Below are positions 16,622 through 62,102 of a stretch of DNA of 64,000 nucleotides, in pieces. Where the stretch lies: positions 185,854-249,853 of IMG/VR virus record IMGVR_UViG_3300025000_000053; one strand, 5' to 3'. The translations under genes were made by a program, and so were the position numbers. The number at the start of each line of letters is the position of its first letter. The first letter of the stretch is position 1. The notes below the pieces were generated by a model. The model was not told the DNA's origin, searched no databases, and worked only from the letters and a program-made list of their open reading frames with translations.

Positions 16622-17707
16622 ATGGTTATTTTTGGACATAAGAGAACTAATGATGTAAATGTCGATTTTGATATTTCAAAATATGACCACATCCAACCTA
16701 CTACTGAAGCATTGGAACAAATCATAACAGAATCAGCTAAAGATTCTTATAAAATCCGTGCAAGTATATATATTTCGGATGTACTGATGGAGCAAGCTGT
16801 ACTGACTGAATCAGCTGATCCTCAAGTTCTTCTTGAGGTATTTGGTAAAGGTTTCTTTACCAAAATAAAAGACATGTTCGTAAGAATGTGGAATGCTATA
16901 AAAGCTTTCTTTGAAAAAATGAAAAGACAACTTATTTTGTTTTTCTCTTCCGGTAAAACTTTTGTAGAAAAGTTTGAAAATGAATTACGCAGTAAGAATG
17001 CAAAAGATTATAAGTACAAATCATTTAAATATACTCCGAGTAAAGGTGATAGTTATGGTAGTAAAGTACTTGATGCAATTAATTCAACTGAAAATGAATA
17101 TGAAAATAAACTTAGTAGTTTAGATGTAAGAGACGTTTCTAAACACAAGAGTGCAATGGATTCTAAAAAAGATAATATGAAGGATTCATATGATACCGGT
17201 GAGGAAAAAGAAGGTATATTTAAAAGTTTAAATGTTGATTCTATTTCTGAATTACAGGAAGAATCATATAAAGAGTACAGGAATGGTTCAAAAGAAAAAG
17301 AAGAATTTAAAGATTTTGAAAACAACAGTAAAGAAGACATGATTAAATTCATTAAAGACAAGGATAAAAATATAACTGACCTTGATAGATATCAGAAAGA
17401 TTTGGATTCTCATTTCAGTAAAGTAATTAAGGCTATTGAAGCCGCCGGAAGTAAGTATAAGAATGAGGAATTATCTAAGGTATCACCTTATGTTTCTCAT
17501 AGCGTTGAAATGTTGAGATTCTGTATGTCGATTCGTTCAGCATTAGTTAAGATGCATATCGATTATATAAAAGATGCAGCCAGTGATTTCGAATCTATTT
17601 TAAAAGGTTTTTTAAGATTTAAAGTAGTTAAAGAAAGTTTTGAAGGTAATTATGATGATGATAAAGGTATTACCAATATCTTTGAAGCAGCAATGAAATT
17701 AGTTTAA
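16622..17707 (+). CDS. Internal head protein paralog 2
   Basis: IITES, VLTES and VLLEV motifs, then GFFTKIKDMFVRMWNAIKAFF. Confidence 0.6.
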   Translation: MVIFGHKRTNDVNVDFDISKYDHIQPTTEALEQIITESAKDSYKIRASIYISDVLMEQAVLTESADPQVLLEVFGKGFFTKIKDMFVRMWNAIKAFFEKMKRQLILFFSSGKTFVEKFENELRSKNAKDYKYKSFKYTPSKGDSYGSKVLDAINSTENEYENKLSSLDVRDVSKHKSAMDSKKDNMKDSYDTGEEKEGIFKSLNVDSISELQEESYKEYRNGSKEKEEFKDFENNSKEDMIKFIKDKDKNITDLDRYQKDLDSHFSKVIKAIEAAGSKYKNEELSKVSPYVSHSVEMLRFCMSIRSALVKMHIDYIKDAASDFESILKGFLRFKVVKESFEGNYDDDKGITNIFEAAMKLV

Positions 17708-40554: not shown

Positions 40555-42803
40555 AACTCTTTGATACTAAGAAATTTATCGAAGTGAATAACTTAAGAGA
40601 GGTAACAAATTTAATATTATTTGAAAAAGGAAATATCCCAACTGTTGATGGTTTATTATCAACAGATATATTTGGGGTATCATCTAGAGAAAGAAAAGAA
40701 ACATATGCTTATATTGATTTACACGGACATTTCTTACATCCATTTATATTTAAGACATTAAAACGAATGAATAGAAAATTTGAATCTGCTATATATGGGA
40801 ATATAAATTTTATAATTAAAGATGGTGAATTAGTTGAAGATGAAAACGGAGAAAGTGGAATAGACTTTTTATATAAAAATTGGGAAAAATTTAATTTTGA
40901 ACGAAATAATAGTATGATGCGTAATGAAAGAATTTCTGTTTTAGAATCATATAAAAAAAATGTTTTATTTACTAAGTATTGGATTGTTATGCCAGCTTTT
41001 TTTAGAGATGTGAATTTACAATTTGCAGCTGAAGGAAGAGTATCTCACCATGAGATAAATGATAAATATTCTAAGTTAATTAGGTTTGCTTCTATAATTA
41101 TTAATAACAATTTTGATTTTGTTCTAAATACAACTAAAGCAAAAATTCAAGAAACTCTTGTTGAAATCTACGATTTACTTAAAGGTAAGATAGAAAAGAA
41201 ACAAGGGTTGATTCGTAAATCATTATTAGGTAAATCAATAGATTTTGGCGTTAGGAGTGTAAATTTACAATGCACGTGATTCTTTAATTGTCGGGGAAGC
41301 CCTTTAAATCTCTTACTACCAAACTATAATAGCAATATTATAGTGGCGAAGGGTAATGCCTTAGGTATGGTAACAAGGTAAGAAATTAGGTAATCCGCAG
41401 CTAAGATTCTAATATATTAATATTATTAGAATAAAGTTCAACGACTATCTGATGACGCTACTTTTAGTAGAGTAGGAGTAGACTCACAAGTCAATTAATG
41501 GTGAGTTGAAATGGGAAACCATCAAAAAGATGAAGATATAGTCTAGTATCCTAGTGAAAACTAGGGAAGTTCATTAGAGAACTGCATAGTCTGACGAACT
41601 ATGTGAATACAACGAATTTCTGCACCAATATTCAAAGCGAATAAATCAGAAGATATGAAAGTCGATTTTTATAATTGTGGTATACCATTATCACAATGCT
41701 GTTCATTATGCACACCATATATGATAACTTGGGTGAAAAGATTCTTTCAGAGGGAATTAGAAAGACTTTATATGAAATATCCGGTTAAATTAAAAACAGA
41801 AGAGATTATTTATGTTAAATTAAAATCACCTGAGTTATTTTTTAATGATGAATATATTGAAAAGCAAATTAATAAATTTATTTCTAGTTATGGTGATAGA
41901 TTTGAAAAAATCAAATTACCTATAGATGATCCTAAATATGAAAAAAATATTTATTTAAGTTTTATTGGAAGAGAATTTATTAAAGGTGTTCCAGAAACAG
42001 AATCACCTTTAATACAAAGACCTGCTACATGGTGTGATATTTTATATCAAGCAGCAGTTGAAATTACTTCTGATAAACATGTTTATGTAACACGATATCC
42101 TGTTTTAGATTATTTCGGTACTTTTCCTAATAAAATTCATGTTTTATCAACTCATGAAACTATTCCAATGTTTGTTGGTTCTAGGGTATATGAGCACTAC
42201 CCTAAAATAGATATTAAAATGCCTAAAGAAAAAGTTTCTATTACCTTTGCTGATACAGTAACAATGTCAAACCTGTATTTAACAGGTCTTGGTGGAGACT
42301 ACGATGGTTCTTTAAATGCCCACTTATATGGTGACATATATGTGAATCTTCTTTAATTGTCGGGGAGGCTCTTAGAGCTTTTTATTATATAATAAAAAGA
42401 TTGGGTAATCCGCAGCTAAGATTCTAATATATTAATAATATATTAGAATAAAGTTCAACGACTATCCCTAGGTACTGAAATGTACAACAGGAGTAGGGCT
42501 CAAGTGAGTGGGTGAAAATCCCTTAAATCGAAATAGGAAGCACCTCCTATAAGGTGATGATATAGTCTAGTATCCTAGTGAAAGCTAGGGAAGTTCATAA
42601 GAGAACTGCATAGAATAACGACCTATGTGAATATATCGGATCAAGTATCTTTAAAGGTTTTATTTTCACAAGAAGCTAATCTTGAGGCAGATAGAATTAT
42701 GAAATCAAAAGGTCATATTCTTAATATCTATGGACAAAATATGAGAAAGACAACAAATGAAGGTGCTCATACTTTATTTATGTTAACAAAGTTTAATAAA
42801 TAA
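40545..42803 (+). CDS. rpoC: RNA polymerase beta' N-terminal subunit (probably virion RNAP), spliced from exons 40545-41260, 41615-42308, 42639-42803 (524 aa)
   Basis: GLIRKSLLGKSIDFGVRS-V-ISAP and GGDYDG-DQV are restored only after removing two group I introns. Frames checked; stop codon at 42801-42803. Confidence 0.85.
41261..41614 (+). mobile_element. Group I intron 1 (354 nt, ORF-less)
   Basis: P aattgtcgggga, Q aatccgcagc, R gttcaacgacta, S aagatatagtct. P1 gugu|a pairs with ugcac, giving a U.G pair at the splice site. Terminal G at 41614. Confidence 0.9.
42309..42638 (+). mobile_element. Group I intron 2 (330 nt, ORF-less), inside the catalytic DYDG/D motif
   Basis: P/Q/R/S elements present. 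The exon ends in U (ggt), the intron ends in G, and splicing restores DYDGD. Confidence 0.9.
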
Positions 42804-56069: not shown

Positions 56070-58351
56070 TTATATTTTTAGAATATTACTATAGTAATCA
56101 TCTTCAGTTGTCTTAATAATTCCAATACCCAAACTATCTAATACACCATGGAACGTAGATAAATTATTATTTATAATTGTACTATAATCAATAAAAGGAA
56201 TTATCCAATTTGGTATCTTAGGTATATTTCTAGGCAAAGCTATAACTTTAACTCCTTTCTCTCTTATTTTCTTATCACTATTATTATATATATTTTCAAT
56301 TATCCTTTCATATATTTCAGGCTCAGATTGTTTTATTTTTTCAATAGAGTTTTCATCCATATTAACCTTAATAATATCAATGTGTTCAGGTAGTTCTATT
56401 GAATTATCAGGATAAGCATAATTCCATGCTAAAACAGCACGGACACCCATTTCTCTTAATGGATCTTTATATGCTTCTAATTCTTTTACTGATTTAGGAA
56501 TTAGAAAATCTTTTTGACCTGATTCTAGAGATATTCTAATTATATTTTCTAATTTTTCTAATTCTTTTAAAACATTAGATATATTAATTTCTTCAGTTGA
56601 TAATAAATGTTCTTTAATAAGATTTTTAAAGAATTTTTCTGTTGCTTCTCTTGTTGATGACTTAACAAAATCTAACGTAGTGTTCACATAGGTCGTTAAT
56701 CTATGCAGTTCTCTTATGAACTTCCCTAAGTTTCCCTAGGATACCAGACTATATCTTCATCCTTATTATATAACTAATAAGGAGCCTCCCATTTCGATTT
56801 AAGGGATTTTCACCCACTCACTTGAGCCCTACTCCTATTGATCATTTCAGATCCAAAGGGATAGTCGTTGAACCTTTCTCTTATATTAGAGACTTGGCTG
56901 CTGATTACCCAATATTTTAGTTTATTACCTTTATCTTAAGGTACTAAAATCTATAAGGATTTTCCAGCAGTTAAAGAGGTTTTCTTTATATATTACTATA
57001 TAAAGGAGCAATATTTATTACCCTTAATATCAACTTTTTCAGGATATATTTCATCTCCTTCTCTTAATCTAACACTACTTATATATCTTTTCTTTTTCTG
57101 TGTTAAAATAAGTCTAGTGAATAAAAATTCATTTTTCATATTTATTTTATGTCTATATCTTTTAGGTATATTTACATCTTTAGTATATTTCTTCAATGTA
57201 TTAGTAACCATATTAGTTATTATATAAGCCAATAAGTTGATAGAAATAAATTTTAATTCAGTTTTATCCTTATTTATTAATTTATCATTAACATCGATAA
57301 TATTATATTTAATAAATTTAACCCATTTATCAATAGTCATAATAGTTGAATCTGTATCTGAACCAACTACAGTTTTTCTTTCATCATATTTTAATCTACG
57401 AATCCTATTATATGGAGAAAAATTAAAGAAAACAAATTCTTTATATAGTTTCCATAATAGTTCTAAATCATCTTTTACGTTATTAGGTATCTTATTAGGA
57501 TTTTTAAATGTATCAATATTTTCTATAATATATGATAATAAGTTTCTTATTTTTCTTAATTTTGAAAATTCAAAAATGTTATTCTTATAGTAAATTCTAT
57601 TAATATCTTTTTGACTTAAAGATAATAAATAATTTAAAATAAAAGAATTATACTCTTTTTTATAATTAAAAAATCTTTTCTTTAAATATTTCATTAATTG
57701 TTTTGAACTAATATTTTCTAAAAAATTATCATTTAAATTTCTTTTTTCCTTAATTACATTAGTTAAAAAAAACACACATTCTTCAAGATTATTAAATGGA
57801 GCATTATTTTCTAAAAAAGTTTCAAAAGCCATTTCAGCTGTAGCTATTAATGATTGGCCGGAGTTTGTAATAGAACTGGCGGTGTATAAATTATAAAAAT
57901 TAGATGTTGGGGCTCCGTTGGACCCGAAGAACGAGTTTGCGTTGGTTTTCTCAGAACCTTGTAACCTATCAAATGTCCCATATTCATAATCATCTTTTGA
58001 ATATTTTTTTAATTGATTTTTATACTCTTTTCTTAACGACATAAAGTTTTCTAGCATAACAGCGGCTGGATTCAATGATTCATCTTGATTTTTAAAAAAT
58101 ACTCCGAATCCAGCAACTATAGGTTTAGTTTTTTTAACCCAATCATATACTGATATTAAATCTACATTAATAGATTTATGAATATAGTTATTATGAATTA
58201 TAGCTTTAGGGTTAATTAAGTTTTTATCTATAATATCATCTAAAACTTTTGATATATCTTTATTTGTTAGTTCAGGATACATTCTTTTAAATATCTCTAT
58301 ATTACTTTCTTTCCAATCTTTTATAAATAAACTTTTAATTTTTTTAGATAT
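56070..58351 (-). CDS. polB: Family B DNA polymerase, C-terminal polypeptide of a split enzyme; exons 58351(or 58282)-57020 and 56675-56070
   Basis: EKTNANSFFG (motif B), GSDTDS (motif C), KKRY, and DIKG-LDFVKSST restored after splicing. Motif A (DxxSLYP) is absent. Confidence 0.85.
56676..57019 (-). mobile_element. Group I intron 3 (344 nt, ORF-less) in the DNA polymerase gene
   Basis: On the minus strand: P aactgctggaaa, Q aatcagcagc, R gttcaacgacta, S aagatatagtct. The exon ends ggt and the intron ends in G; frame restored. Confidence 0.9.
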
Positions 58352-59064: not shown

Positions 59065-62000
59065 ATGTTATTGGAAAATAATATAAAAGAAATTATTGGT
59101 TTATTAAGTAACAAAGTATTTATTATTTCAGAAATAATGGAAACTAGAAAAACTTTTAATGAGAATCTAGAGACAATTTATGATTATTTAAAACAAGGTT
59201 TTGAAATTAAAGAATTAAGAACATGTCCAACTTACTTTAGATTTAAAGAAGATGGTTATATACACACTTTACAATTAAGACATTTTCTTACCAACTTGAT
59301 GTTTTGGGAACCATTAATGAGATTTGATTGTTCAGATAAGTTAGATGAAACTTATATTGTTGATTGTACTAAAATGTCATCTAAATTAATTAAAAATTAT
59401 ATTGATAATAAAATTGTTATACCTTATAGAAGAATAATCGAAAATAAGAAAATGAATAAAGTTATTCATGATATGATTTATAATCTATCAAGAATATCAA
59501 CAGATTTTAATATTATATTAGGATTGTCTATTAATGTTGAGACATTTATTGATGTTGCAAAAAGAAATCCAAGATTTAATGAGATTATTAGGACTCAATT
59601 AAATGAAGATATGCAACCAACTGAGATTGAGGAATATTTAGATAAATTGATGCATGAACAAATAGAAATCTTAAAAAATGATGATAAAGATAATTTATTA
59701 AAACCAATACTTAAATCAGGTGCTGGTATTAAAAGTAAACAATTGTCAGAATTCTCAATATCTGGCGGGTTAAAAATTAGCCCCGTACATAGGCGACTAT
59801 GTGCGTAAACCTCTTTAATTGCTGGGACTCTCTTAAAATATTCTTCTACCAGAATATTAATAAAAGTTGGTGTTGATATTGAAGCTAGTTAATATCGATT
59901 ATGATAAAAAGAAGAAGTTATATATAGTTACCTTTTTTAAAAATAAGGGTGGTTATAAAATAAGAACTAAAAGATTTACTTATTCTGAAGATAGTCATGG
60001 ACCTTTCGCTAGGATTCTTGCTTTACATACAATGAAGACAGGTGAGAGACTTTATCATTGGTTTGTGACTGACGGTATATATACATCTATTTTTATATAT
60101 AATAAAAAATATGGTTTTAGACGTATGTTAATCGATAATGAATTTATTGACATCGTCAAAAATCATAGGATTAATATAATTAAAAATAAAACTGGTCAGA
60201 ATATATTTTATGCGACAATAAAAATAAACGGTAAGAATGTCCCTGTACATCGTCTTATTATGGGTCTAGGAGAATATAGAAATGATCCTGTAGATCATGT
60301 ATTTCATGATTCTTTAGATAATATGAAATTAAATCTACGTGTCTGTACTCCTAGTATTAATAATAGGAATTCAAGATTACGATGTGACAGTAAAACTGGT
60401 ATACAGGGAGTTTGTTTTAATAAAAATAAATGCTCGTATACCGCAGAAGTTAGAGATTTTAATGGTAGAAAAATTAGAAAAAGCTTTCCCATAAAACTTT
60501 ATGGTGAAAATAAAGCCATTGAATTAGCAAAACAATGGCGTGAAATTATGGTAGAAGAATATTATGAGAGACAATCAGCAGCGAAGCCTGATTATTAGTC
60601 AGGAACGTTCAACGACTATCCAAAGCATGTTCATTATTGATATAAAATATAATGAACATAAGCGAGTAGAGTAGGACTAGAAGCTAATGCTAGTTCCAAA
60701 CGGGAGGCATCTCACTGAGATGATGATATAGTCTAGTATCCTAAAGTGATTTAGGGAAGTTCATAAGAGAACTGTATAGGGGTTGCGTCCTATATGAATG
60801 ATCGTAAAACCAAATATTTCTGGTACTACTATCCCTATACCTATTAATAGTAATTATATCGTAGGTGGATTGAGGAATATAACTAATTATTATATAGATT
60901 CTCTCGGTGGTCGCAAATCATTGATTATGAGTAAGCTTGAGATGGGAAATTCTGGGCATTTCGCACGTACTGTGATGCTATTAGTTTCCAGTATTAATTT
61001 ATCTAAAACAGTCGAATCATGTAATACTGTACATCCAATAAAAATTGAATTAACAACTAAAGACCATTTAATAAGAATGCGGGGTAGATATTATCGAACC
61101 ATGTATTCTAGAAATTATCAATTATTAAAAGGTGATGAATATAATTTAATAGGGGAAACTATTTTTGTTAAATCACCAGTTACTTGTGCTTGTAAAGATG
61201 GGATATGTAAAATGTGTTATGGTGAATTATCATATATAAATAATGATATTTCAATAGGTGTATATGCTGGTACAAAAATCACAGAACCAGTTTCACAAAA
61301 TATTTTATCCTCTAAACATTTATTAACAACTAAATCAGAAAAAATACAATTTAATGAAGAATTCTATAGATTTTTTAATATAAGTGGTAATGAAATAATT
61401 ATTAATCCAAATGATGATTTAGATAATTTAGATGATTATAGTTTACTTATAATTAAAAGTAATATTAAAACAATAGCTGATTATGATGATAATGATATGG
61501 AATTTAATGAATATGTAAATCTATTCCATGTATATAATAAGAAAACTAATGAGATGATAGAAATAAAAGAAAGTAGAGATAAAGATTTATATATCTCTCC
61601 TGAATTAAGAAAATTATTTAAGAAAAAAAGTAAAAAGGAAGTTTATGAAATTGATTTTAAAAATATTGATGATGATAGAATTTTTGTTATAGAAGTAGTT
61701 AATAATGAGTTAACCCGTCCACTATATGATATTATGCGTTTAATTGATAGGGTTGACTATAGAATCATACATTGGAACTGTGTTACAATTGATCAAATGT
61801 GTCAAAAGATGTTAGATTTAATAATAGAGTCTGAAATTAATTCTGACTCTGTTCATGGTGAATTAATTTTAACACCATTATTAAGAGATAAAGATGATAT
61901 ATTAGAAAGACCTAAATTTAATAAGTACTTTAATGGTGATGAAGGATACCAAATTCTAACAGTTAAATCTGCTTTAGAAAAACATCCATCAGTATTAGTT

Positions 62001-62102
62001 GGTTTATCATTCCAAGCACTTGATAGACAATTAACAAACCCATTAACATTTAGAAAAAAGGAAAGTTCATTTATTGATCCTTTCTTTAAAGAAAGACCAT
62101 AA
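59065..62102 (+). CDS. rpoC: RNA polymerase beta' C-terminal subunit (probably non-virion RNAP), exons 59065-59770 and 60805-62102 (667 aa)
   Basis: Splicing gives GGL-KPNISG. Bridge-helix-like GL..YY..GGRKSL..SGHFAR and Zn site SPVTC..ICKMCYG are present. Confidence 0.8.
59771..60804 (+). mobile_element. Group I intron 4 (1034 nt) carrying a homing endonuclease
   Basis: P1 gggu|u pairs with agccc (U.G at the junction). P aattgctggga, Q aatcagcagc, R gttcaacgacta, S gatatagtct; terminal G at 60804. Confidence 0.9.
59867..60598 (+). CDS. Intron-encoded HNH homing endonuclease with AP2-like DNA-binding domain(s)
   Basis: VHRLIM..VDHVFHDSLDN..NLR (HNH); SKTGIQGVCF..YTA..KSF..YG..AIELA (AP2). 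Confidence 0.85.
   Translation: MVLILKLVNIDYDKKKKLYIVTFFKNKGGYKIRTKRFTYSEDSHGPFARILALHTMKTGERLYHWFVTDGIYTSIFIYNKKYGFRRMLIDNEFIDIVKNHRINIIKNKTGQNIFYATIKINGKNVPVHRLIMGLGEYRNDPVDHVFHDSLDNMKLNLRVCTPSINNRNSRLRCDSKTGIQGVCFNKNKCSYTAEVRDFNGRKIRKSFPIKLYGENKAIELAKQWREIMVEEYYERQSAAKPDY

What the first reader, a model, noticed from the sequence alone, without database searches (positions are those of the whole stretch)
59771..60804. AP2-HNH homing endonuclease embedded between P and Q, overlapping the ribozyme core
Seen: the ORF starts just after the P element, and its last codons (RQSAAK) are the Q element caatcagcagcgaag, so it sits in the P5 region with dual-use sequence. Established: an HNH endonuclease in an RNAP intron of phage PhiPA3 has been shown to attack the intron-less RNAP gene of a competing phage. 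Inference: the same interference role is possible here, and it may also serve the three ORF-less introns in trans.
Basis: partly seen in the sequence, partly recalled or inferred. Interest (0 to 1): 0.6.

Follow-up and report, generated by a model that had tools for sequence, protein, structure and literature searches.

The report
Mobile RNA-polymerase intron with HNH-AP2 endonuclease
A self-splicing group I intron in a giant phage's RNA polymerase beta-prime gene carries an HNH-AP2 homing endonuclease gene whose last codons double as ribozyme core; it is a well-known kind of selfish element, notable mainly because strains with and without it occur in the same groundwater samples.

Summary
Window 59771-60804 is a group I intron in the non-virion RNA polymerase beta-prime C-terminal gene of an uncultivated AR9/PBS1-like jumbo phage. 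Its 243-codon ORF (59867-60598) lies in the P5 loop. Its last 11 codons, stop included (60566-60598), are also P5', J5/4, P4' (the Q element) and half of P6.

The protein has an unassigned N-terminal domain, an I-HmuI-type HNH motif with all key residues, and a C-terminal AP2 domain. Its nearest named relative is AR9 g190 (33% identity), an annotated HNH-AP2 homing endonuclease in another RNAP intron.

The same intron and ORF sit at the same site in two related metagenomic phage lineages. The site is empty in six others and in AR9. An intron-less strain occurs in the same groundwater samples and is even assembled into the start of this record. The ORF is under purifying selection (dN/dS 0.21-0.35).

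The likeliest function is homing by nicking the empty allele. PhiPA3-like interference is plausible but untested, and gp210 is not a detectable sequence relative. Serving the three ORF-less introns in trans is not supported: the four insertion sites are no more alike than random sequence, and other introns in the record carry their own HNH genes. This is a new member of a known kind, of moderate interest.

The parts
59065..59770 (+). Exon 1 of the non-virion RNAP beta-prime C-terminal subunit gene. It ends on U59770, the first base of a Leu codon.
   Evidence: ORF list. Aligns to AR9 g154 residues 60-218. Contiguous with exon 2 in the intron-less relatives L018, L020-L024 and AR9.
59771..60804 (+). 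Group I intron of phage IA type with a P7.1/P7.2 region, 1034 nt. The 5' splice site follows U59770 and the terminal G is G60804.
   Evidence: The splice sites are fixed by the U-G pair in P1, by the terminal G, and by in-frame collinearity with empty alleles.
59767..59783 (+). P1 hairpin, 59767-73 paired with 59777-83, holding the U59770-G59780 wobble. The same guide bases (59777-79) can pair with the first bases of exon 2 to form P10.
   Evidence: Constrained fold. The P10 pairing is inferred from the shared TAAAA at the start of the intron and the start of exon 2.
59784..59805 (+). P2 hairpin, 9 bp.
59810..59825 (+). P3 5' strand (59810-13), J3/4, and the P4 5' strand, which is the P element (59820-25).
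   Evidence: P4 comes from the fold and from two compensatory P/Q classes among introns. P3 pairing with 60704-07 is inferred by homology to intron 2 in the Rfam alignment; the fold did not recover it.
59829..59840 (+). P5 5' strand (59829-35) and a P5 extension (59837-40).
   Evidence: pairs with 60565-71 and 60560-63.
59867..60598 (+). Homing endonuclease gene of 243 codons plus TAG. It has an unassigned N-terminal domain (about residues 1-110), an HNH motif (about 125-170; D143 H144 N152 N156 N165 N168) and an AP2 domain (177-229). The start is uncertain: TTG 59867, GTG 59870 or TTG 59873/59879.
   Evidence: dN/dS 0.21-0.35 against orthologues.
60566..60598 (+). Dual-use stretch. The last 10 codons plus the stop are also P5' (60565-71), J5/4, P4', which is the Q element (60575-80), and the P6 5' strand and loop. 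The stop TAG (60596-98) straddles the P6 loop and 3' strand.
   Evidence: More conserved than the ORF body: 90% and 83% against 81% and 66% nucleotide identity to L014 and L017.
60587..60603 (+). P6 hairpin.
   Evidence: Relatives lack 4 nt of the loop, and with them the stop codon.
60607..60618 (+). R element and P7 5' strand.
   Evidence: Exact 12-mer shared with the other introns. Rfam alignment.
60623..60707 (+). P7.1/P7.2 region and the P3 3' strand (60704-07).
   Evidence: Hairpin 60627-37 with 60649-59. Homology to the insert between R and P3' in introns 1 and 2.
60708..60804 (+). P8 (60708-22), the S element and P7 3' strand (60725-33), P9 (60740-55), P9.1 (60758-73), P9.2 (60774-95) and the terminal G60804.
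60805..62102 (+). Exon 2 of the beta-prime C-terminal subunit gene. It holds the bridge-helix-like segment and Rpb1 domain 5.
   Evidence: Pfam RNA_pol_Rpb1_5 and PHROG 3015. 31% identity to AR9 g154 residues 226-631.

Best explanation
This is a composite selfish element: a self-splicing group I intron whose P5 loop has been colonised by a gene for a site-specific HNH endonuclease with an AP2 DNA-binding domain.

The intron splits the essential beta-prime C-terminal subunit gene of the phage's non-virion RNA polymerase at a conserved Gly-Gly-Leu-Lys-Pro site. RNA splicing restores the reading frame.

By inference, during co-infection with a related phage whose site is empty the endonuclease binds that site and cuts. 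By analogy with I-HmuI and gp210 it probably nicks one strand. Recombinational repair from the intron-bearing genome then copies the intron and flanking markers into the cut allele (homing, marker exclusion). If repair fails, the same cut would damage a competitor.

The ORF has no stop codon of its own. It reads on into the ribozyme until the core supplies one: in the P6 loop here, and only after P7 in relatives. Those codons are therefore constrained by RNA structure rather than by the protein.

Shown: the anatomy, the domain content, the intact catalytic motif, the patchy distribution, co-occurrence with an empty allele, and purifying selection.

Inferred: splicing, cleavage, nicking and homing.
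For: - Ribozyme. All helices were recovered with the ORF interior unpaired. Rfam matches the 3' part. R and S are exact. The P4 change is compensatory: TCGG with CCGC in most introns, CTGG with CAGC here.
- Exons. They are collinear with the intron-less AR9 g154, with 7 residues across the gap on both sides, and with six metagenomic relatives.
- Protein. AP2 is above the Pfam cut-off. PHROG 99 HNH scores 6e-23. I-HmuI (1U3E) is the best solved-structure match by sequence, and D143 H144 N152 N156 N165 N168 align to its D74 H75 N83 N87 N96 N99. The AP2 fold gives Z 9.2 at 2.1 A over 61 residues. The nearest named relative is AR9 g190, an HNH-AP2 gene in a vRNAP beta intron.
- Independent mobility of the gene. 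AR9 g190 lies in L6 of its intron, while this gene lies in L5.
- Distribution. The same intron and ORF are at the same site in L014/L019 (75% aa identity) and L017 (57%). The site is empty in L018, L020-L024 and AR9.
- Co-occurrence. Contigs from the same groundwater runs join 59775 to 60821 with L018-like letters, at depth comparable to the intron-bearing forms. The start of the record carries this empty allele.
- Selection. dN/dS is 0.21-0.35, with no frameshift despite 19-34% nucleotide divergence.
Against: - No RNA data exist, so splicing is not shown.
- No ATG start and no clear Shine-Dalgarno sequence precede the ORF, although most long genes of this record have one. Expression may be weak.
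- Pfam HNH_3 itself scores only 12.9 bits against a cut-off of 24.8, and the AlphaFold model of the HNH core is below pLDDT 50.
- Exon and intron divergence between the window and L014 are similar, and no co-conversion tract is seen next to the intron. Recent homing is therefore not demonstrated; the pattern also fits old vertical inheritance with loss or non-acquisition in L018.
- The empty L018 site differs from the window's flanks from position +8 onward, so it could be a resistant variant.
Confidence: 0.75

Rival explanations
1. The endonuclease is kept mainly as a weapon, as with PhiPA3 gp210. It nicks the beta-prime gene of co-infecting intron-less relatives and lowers their yield, which gives the carrier phage a net benefit beyond selfish spread.
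For: gp210 does this to PhiKZ. Here an intron-less strain, about 87% nucleotide identity, occurs in the same samples at similar contig depth. The target gene is essential. The ORF is under purifying selection.
Against: There is no functional data. gp210 is not a detectable sequence relative and uses NUMOD rather than AP2 modules. The intron-less strain carries its own NUMOD4-HNH intron 100 nt downstream, and L014 carries both elements, which fits ordinary reciprocal homing equally well. Contig depths are not a measure of fitness.
Confidence: 0.25
2. The single HNH-AP2 enzyme also mobilises the three ORF-less introns of the window (beta-prime N-terminal gene twice, DNA polymerase once) by cutting their empty sites in trans.
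For: The four introns share near-identical R, S and P9 sequences. The DNA polymerase intron is absent from the second strain, so it is also polymorphic.
Against: The four 40-nt insertion sites match each other at 9-16 positions, against a random mean of 12.6 (sd 3.0). This ribozyme's 3' half is at most 71% identical to any other intron in the record, so the others are not recent copies of it. The record has three other intron-borne NUMOD4-HNH genes. AR9 has 18 Rfam group I matches, though only the g189 stretch was examined for ORFs; there, of its introns, one carries an annotated ORF. That suggests ORF-less introns are common in this clade.
Confidence: 0.05
3. The ORF no longer acts as a nuclease. 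It is either decaying or has been recruited as a splicing helper (maturase) or a DNA-binding regulator.
For: The start codon is weak and the ORF overlaps the core, so translation and ribozyme folding could be coupled. The HNH core is poorly modelled.
Against: All motif residues that align with I-HmuI's catalytic and metal-binding positions are invariant across six homologues. dN/dS is well below 1. To my knowledge, maturase activity is documented for LAGLIDADG proteins and not for HNH proteins.
Confidence: 0.08

Closest known systems
Bacillus phage AR9 g190 (HNH homing endonuclease with AP2 domain) in a group I intron of the virion RNAP beta gene g189
   Same: Closest named homologue: 33% identity over residues 4-231, including the N-terminal domain. 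It has the same HNH plus AP2 content, sits in a group I intron of a multisubunit RNAP gene, and belongs to a jumbo phage of the same broad clade.
   Different: A different host gene (vRNAP beta, not nvRNAP beta-prime). Its ORF lies in the P6 loop and ends before the P6 3' strand, so it does not overlap the core. Here the ORF lies in the P5 loop and runs into P5', P4' and P6.
I-HmuI / I-HmuII of Bacillus phages SPO1 and SP82 (PDB 1U3E)
   Same: Best solved-structure match by sequence for the nuclease part, with the DH...N...N motif aligned. Both are encoded in phage group I introns in an essential polymerase gene. From the literature as I know it, they are nicking enzymes, and the two phages' enzymes compete during mixed infection.
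   Different: I-HmuI uses NUMOD and helix-turn-helix DNA-binding modules, not AP2. Its host gene is the DNA polymerase. Activity of the present protein is untested.
PhiPA3 gp210 (intron HNH endonuclease that nicks PhiKZ gp178)
   Same: An HNH endonuclease in a group I intron of a jumbo-phage RNAP gene, inserted at a conserved site, with a natural intron-less relative.
   Different: No detectable pairwise similarity (E 0.79). It has HNH_3 plus NUMOD1 / I-HmuI-like modules. Its host gene is the vRNAP beta subunit, and it belongs to the nucleus-forming chimallivirus lineage.
NUMOD4-HNH genes in other introns of the same record
   Same: The same kind of element in the same genome. One of them sits 100 nt downstream in the same gene of the co-occurring strain.
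   Different: They lie in the P6 loop, have NUMOD4 plus HNH_3 architecture (PHROG 59) and lack an AP2 domain. A search with the HNH-AP2 protein does not find them.

Membership tests
Group I intron (Rfam RF00028) | P1 with a U-G wobble at the 5' splice site, and a terminal G at the 3' splice site | tested here: met
   U59770 pairs with G59780 in P1. G60804 precedes exon 2. Shifting the boundary within the TAAAA repeat loses the terminal G.
Group I intron (Rfam RF00028) | Conserved core P3-P9 with P/Q and R/S pairings | tested here: met
   P4, P5, P6, P8 and P9 were recovered. R and S are exact. P4 covaries between intron classes. P3 is assigned by homology only.
Group I intron (Rfam RF00028) | Score at or above the Rfam gathering threshold | tested here: not met
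   38.2 bits against 50, on the 3' part only. The model cannot bridge the 750-nt insert. ORF-less sister introns score 57-88 bits.
Group I intron (Rfam RF00028) | Removal restores a continuous, conserved reading frame | tested here: met
   In frame, and collinear with AR9 g154 and six intron-less relatives. The exons were compared separately and were not joined.
Group I intron (Rfam RF00028) | Self-splicing with a guanosine cofactor | not testable with these tools
   No RNA run holds the stretch.
HNH (His-Me finger) homing endonuclease, I-HmuI type | Beta-beta-alpha-metal motif with the catalytic His and metal-binding Asn residues | tested here: met
   D143 H144 N152 N156 N165 N168 are invariant in six homologues and align to I-HmuI. 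PHROG 99 scores 6e-23.
HNH (His-Me finger) homing endonuclease, I-HmuI type | Pfam HNH_3 above its gathering score | tested here: not met
   12.9 bits against 24.8 on the isolated segment, and not listed for the whole protein. AR9 g190 also falls just below, at 22.7 bits.
HNH (His-Me finger) homing endonuclease, I-HmuI type | Patchy presence with empty cognate sites in close relatives | tested here: met
HNH (His-Me finger) homing endonuclease, I-HmuI type | Site-specific nicking or cleavage of the intron-less allele | not testable with these tools
   Needs a biochemical assay.
AP2 DNA-binding domain (PF00847) | Profile match above the curated cut-off | tested here: met
   39 bits against 33.3, residues 177-229.
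AP2 DNA-binding domain (PF00847) | Three-stranded sheet packed on a helix | tested here: met
   Model strands 182-208 and helix 214-233 at pLDDT 65-81. Z 9.2 with rmsd 2.1 A over 61 residues to an ApiAP2 domain, and Z 5.1 to the AtERF1 GCC-box domain.
PhiPA3 gp210-type interference endonuclease | Sequence relationship to gp210 | tested here: not met
   BLASTP E 0.79. The DNA-binding modules differ.
PhiPA3 gp210-type interference endonuclease | Reduces the yield of an intron-less co-infecting phage | not testable with these tools
   The phage is uncultivated. Only co-occurrence of the two alleles is shown.

The most novel reading that the evidence does not exclude
Two co-occurring strains of this groundwater phage carry different HNH-bearing introns only 100 nt apart in the same essential beta-prime gene: HNH-AP2 in one strain, NUMOD4-HNH in the other. 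Each strain is empty at the other's site.

The two enzymes may act as reciprocal weapons or marker-exclusion devices in mixed infections. That would be a natural-population counterpart of the SPO1/SP82 and PhiPA3/PhiKZ laboratory cases.

The AP2 domain may read the GC-rich GGCGGG next to the insertion site. That hexamer occurs only twice in the 250-kb record, at the occupied site and at the empty site.
Probability: 0.25. Interest if true: 0.55.

Novelty: new member of a known kind. Interest (0 to 1): 0.35.

Why it matters
Intron-borne HNH endonucleases in jumbo-phage RNA polymerase genes have recently been shown, in one laboratory pair, to decide the outcome of mixed infections.

This locus offers a second, unrelated enzyme architecture (HNH plus AP2) in a different polymerase subunit. 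It also provides the natural substrates: an occupied allele and an empty allele from the same groundwater samples, and a second intron with its own endonuclease 100 nt away in the other strain. Homing, resistance and interference can therefore be tested with defined DNA.

It is also a clear example of an endonuclease gene borrowing its stop codon from the ribozyme core. The overlap is 33 nt here and about 84 nt in relatives, which bears on how translation and ribozyme folding are kept apart.

None of this changes what is known about the class.

Tried and rejected
- A megablast of the locus against phage records found nothing. The phage has only distant cultured relatives.
- Rfam at gathering threshold, and at E 0.01 over the whole window, misses this intron. 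It also misses the ORF-bearing orthologues in L018 and L019. I located those with tblastn and motif scans instead.
- The AlphaFold model of the whole protein is weak: mean pLDDT 60.8, with the HNH core below 50. The N-terminal domain modelled alone is worse, at 49, so I did not use it for fold searches.
- The idea that the N-terminal domain is a second AP2 domain stays open:
  - profile-profile probability 0.5%;
  - no hit to solved structures and none in Pfam;
  - no lead from the Atlas;
  - only a tandem-AP2 match at Z 6.4 with rmsd 15 A, and generic matches at Z about 4.
- No RNA run holds the locus, so I could not look for spliced reads.
- I looked for a co-conversion tract, meaning higher exon identity between the intron-bearing alleles close to the intron. 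There is none.
- L017, the third orthologue, is mosaic. Its sequence after P7 is unrelated (37-40% identity) and its downstream ORF looks like an RNAP beta segment, so I used it only for the ORF and the 5' core.
- The mir-957 and SNORD43 hits inside the ORF are far below their cut-offs, and I dismissed them.
- I never joined the exons into a spliced model. All exon searches and comparisons were done exon by exon, by reference.
- I did not run the large representative-protein search, because the family scans already placed the protein.

Full report
**What is there**

The window is the last 64 kb of a 249,853-bp IMG/VR virus record with 24.5% G+C. The proteins around the finding are 25-33% identical to those of Bacillus phage AR9/PBS1 and share its gene order: DNA polymerase on the minus strand, a small gene, then the non-virion RNAP beta-prime C-terminal subunit.

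In the window that subunit gene is split.
- Exon 1 is 59065-59770 and exon 2 is 60805-62102.
- Exon 1 aligns to AR9 g154 up to residue 218, and exon 2 aligns from residue 226.
- The gap holds exactly seven residues on both sides.
- I compared the exons separately, by reference, and left out any joined spliced model.

**The intron**

The stretch 59771-60804 is a group I intron.
- Rfam matches 60482-60756 at E 7.7e-8. That is 38 bits, below the 50-bit cut-off, because the covariance model cannot bridge the insert.
- The R and S elements are exact copies of those in three ORF-less introns of the window. Two of these pass the cut-off in the window scan, and the third passes in the whole-record search.
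- I folded the native sequence with only the ORF interior held single-stranded. This returned P1 (U59770 with G59780), P2, P4 (59820-25 with 60575-80), P5 (59829-35 with 60565-71, plus a 4-bp extension), P6 (60587-93 with 60597-603), a P7.1-type hairpin, P8, P9, P9.1 and P9.2.
- P3 (59810-13 with 60704-07) and P7 (60614-18 with 60729-33) are assigned by homology.
- P4 covaries. Most introns of the record pair TCGG with CCGC. This intron, its orthologues and the DNA polymerase intron pair CTGG with CAGC.

**The ORF**

- The ORF 59867-60598 lies in the P5 loop.
- Its last ten codons and its stop (60566-60598) are also P5', J5/4, P4' (the Q element) and the first strand and loop of P6.
- This stretch is more conserved than the ORF body: 90% and 83% nucleotide identity to L014 and L017, against 81% and 66%. 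That is as expected if RNA structure constrains it.
- The orthologues lack 4 nt of the P6 loop, and with them the stop codon. Their ORFs (260 and 259 aa) read on through P6, J6/7 and the R element into P7.1. The tail therefore varies in length and is probably dispensable. The ORF simply ends wherever the core supplies a stop.
- No ATG is available. The first codon, TTG 59867, corresponds to the ATG of L014. There is no clear Shine-Dalgarno sequence, whereas most long genes of the record have one.

**The protein**

- Pfam AP2 is above its cut-off at residues 177-229. PHROG 99 (HNH endonuclease) scores 6e-23.
- A profile of six homologues finds I-HmuI (1U3E) as the best solved chain, followed by AP2 domains.
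- D143 H144 N152 N156 N165 N168 are invariant and align with I-HmuI D74 H75 N83 N87 N96 N99. The roles of those I-HmuI residues are from my knowledge of that structure.
- The modelled AP2 domain matches solved AP2 domains at Z 9.2 with rmsd 2.1 A over 61 residues.
- The HNH core and the N-terminal roughly 110 residues are poorly modelled. The N-terminal domain is shared with AR9 g190 but remains unassigned.
- dN/dS against the orthologues is 0.21-0.35.

**Relatives and distribution**

- The closest named relative is AR9 g190, at 33% identity. It is annotated as an HNH homing endonuclease with an AP2 domain, inside an intron of the virion RNAP beta gene. There the ORF sits in the P6 loop and does not overlap the core. 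The endonuclease gene has therefore entered different loops of different introns.
- Close homologues are few: one at 75% and one at 57% identity.
- The 75% homologue lies at exactly the same site of the same gene in L014/L019, with the same P1 guide sequence.
- The site is empty in L018, L020, L021, L022, L023, L024 and AR9.

**Two strains in one record**

Logan contigs from the groundwater runs that hold the window contain three forms: the window form, an L014-like intron-bearing form, and a form that joins 59775 to 60821 with L018-like letters. The last is an empty allele.

The record overlaps itself.
- Window 42401-64000 is 80-89% identical to record 1-21181.
- In this gene that first part is 100% identical to L018.
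- The record is therefore about one genome plus 21 kb of a second strain.

That second strain:
- lacks the HNH-AP2 intron;
- lacks the DNA polymerase intron;
- carries a NUMOD4-HNH intron 100 nt downstream, at a site that is empty in the window.

L014 carries both elements. Exon and intron divergence are similar and no co-conversion tract is visible. The pattern therefore shows polymorphism and opportunity for homing, not a recent homing event.

- The PhiPA3 statement is accurate. However, gp210 shows no detectable similarity to this protein, has NUMOD-type DNA-binding modules, and sits in a different subunit gene. Interference is plausible and untested.
- Trans-service of the ORF-less introns is not supported.
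  - The four insertion sites match at 9-16 of 40 positions, against a random mean of 12.6.
  - This ribozyme's 3' half is at most 71% identical to any other intron in the record, against 92% for its orthologue.
  - The record holds about 19 R elements, or about 17 per genome once the overlap is discounted, and three other intron-borne HNH genes.
- A heavy intron load is typical of this clade. AR9 has 18 Rfam matches, while two complete, more distant relatives have none.
- Overlap between nuclease genes and group I core elements has been noted before, in Bastillevirinae introns (PMC11878797).

**Verdict**

This is a genuine, well-formed mobile group I intron with an apparently functional HNH-AP2 homing endonuclease gene. 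It is a new member of a known kind. Its useful features are the P5-loop position with core overlap and the naturally co-occurring occupied and empty alleles.

Noticed in passing
window 42401-64000, against record G000:C1:1-21181: The record overlaps itself at 80-89% nucleotide identity. Its two ends come from two related strains, so the 'genome' is about 228.6 kb plus about 21 kb of a second haplotype. In the beta-prime gene that haplotype is identical to L018. Gene and intron counts for the record are inflated by this.
   Followed up: partly
window 56676-57019 (- strand): An ORF-less group I intron in the family B DNA polymerase gene, between 'VDIKG' and 'LDFVK'. It is absent from the second strain (record 14673|14674 is contiguous) and from L014, where the polymerase is a single 648-aa ORF.
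   Followed up: partly
window 42309-42638 (+): An ORF-less intron splits the catalytic Asp motif of the beta-prime N-terminal subunit: exon 'GGDYDG', then the intron, then 'DQV'. The same site is occupied at the start of the record (Q, R and S at record 7, 42 and 160).
   Followed up: partly
window 41261-41614 (+): A second ORF-less intron in the same beta-prime N-terminal gene, after 'IDFGVRS'. I placed the splice sites by reading frame, by a GUGU/GCAC P1, and by similarity to the bacterial 'GRSVI' motif as I remember it.
   Followed up: partly
record G000:C1 17717-18502 (+), 52558-51815 (-), 74333-73746 (-); L003, L004, L005: Three other introns carry NUMOD4 plus HNH_3 endonuclease ORFs (PHROG 59) in their P6 loops. 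An 89-codon ORF with no family match lies in the P6 loop of another intron, at record 178595-178864, and may be a remnant.
   Followed up: partly
record G000:C1 177368-179067 (+) and 85051-85727 (-): Clusters of two or three group I introns within 1-2 kb. The host genes were not identified.
   Followed up: no
L022:2103-2953, and L014:5040-6600: Relatives carry other introns in the same beta-prime gene. L022 has three ORF-less introns within 850 nt. L014 has one ORF-less intron and one NUMOD4-HNH intron, after residues 33 and 47 of exon 2.
   Followed up: partly
window 59854-59879: A 9-bp hairpin (59854-62 with 59871-79) places the candidate start codons TTG 59867 and GTG 59870 in its loop. The same hairpin can form in L014, with one A-U pair in place of a G-U pair. 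It may act as a translational control.
   Followed up: no
window 59764-59769, and record 17414-17419: GGCGGG occurs only twice in the 250-kb, 24.5% G+C record: next to the occupied insertion site and next to the empty insertion site. It resembles the complement of the plant AP2/ERF GCC box. L014 lacks it.
   Followed up: partly
L017:1412-1925: This 1925-nt Logan contig has the orthologous exon 1, 5' core and ORF. After P7 its sequence is unrelated, and the downstream ORF resembles an RNAP beta segment. It is probably an assembly chimera formed through shared intron sequence, or a recombinant intron.
   Followed up: partly
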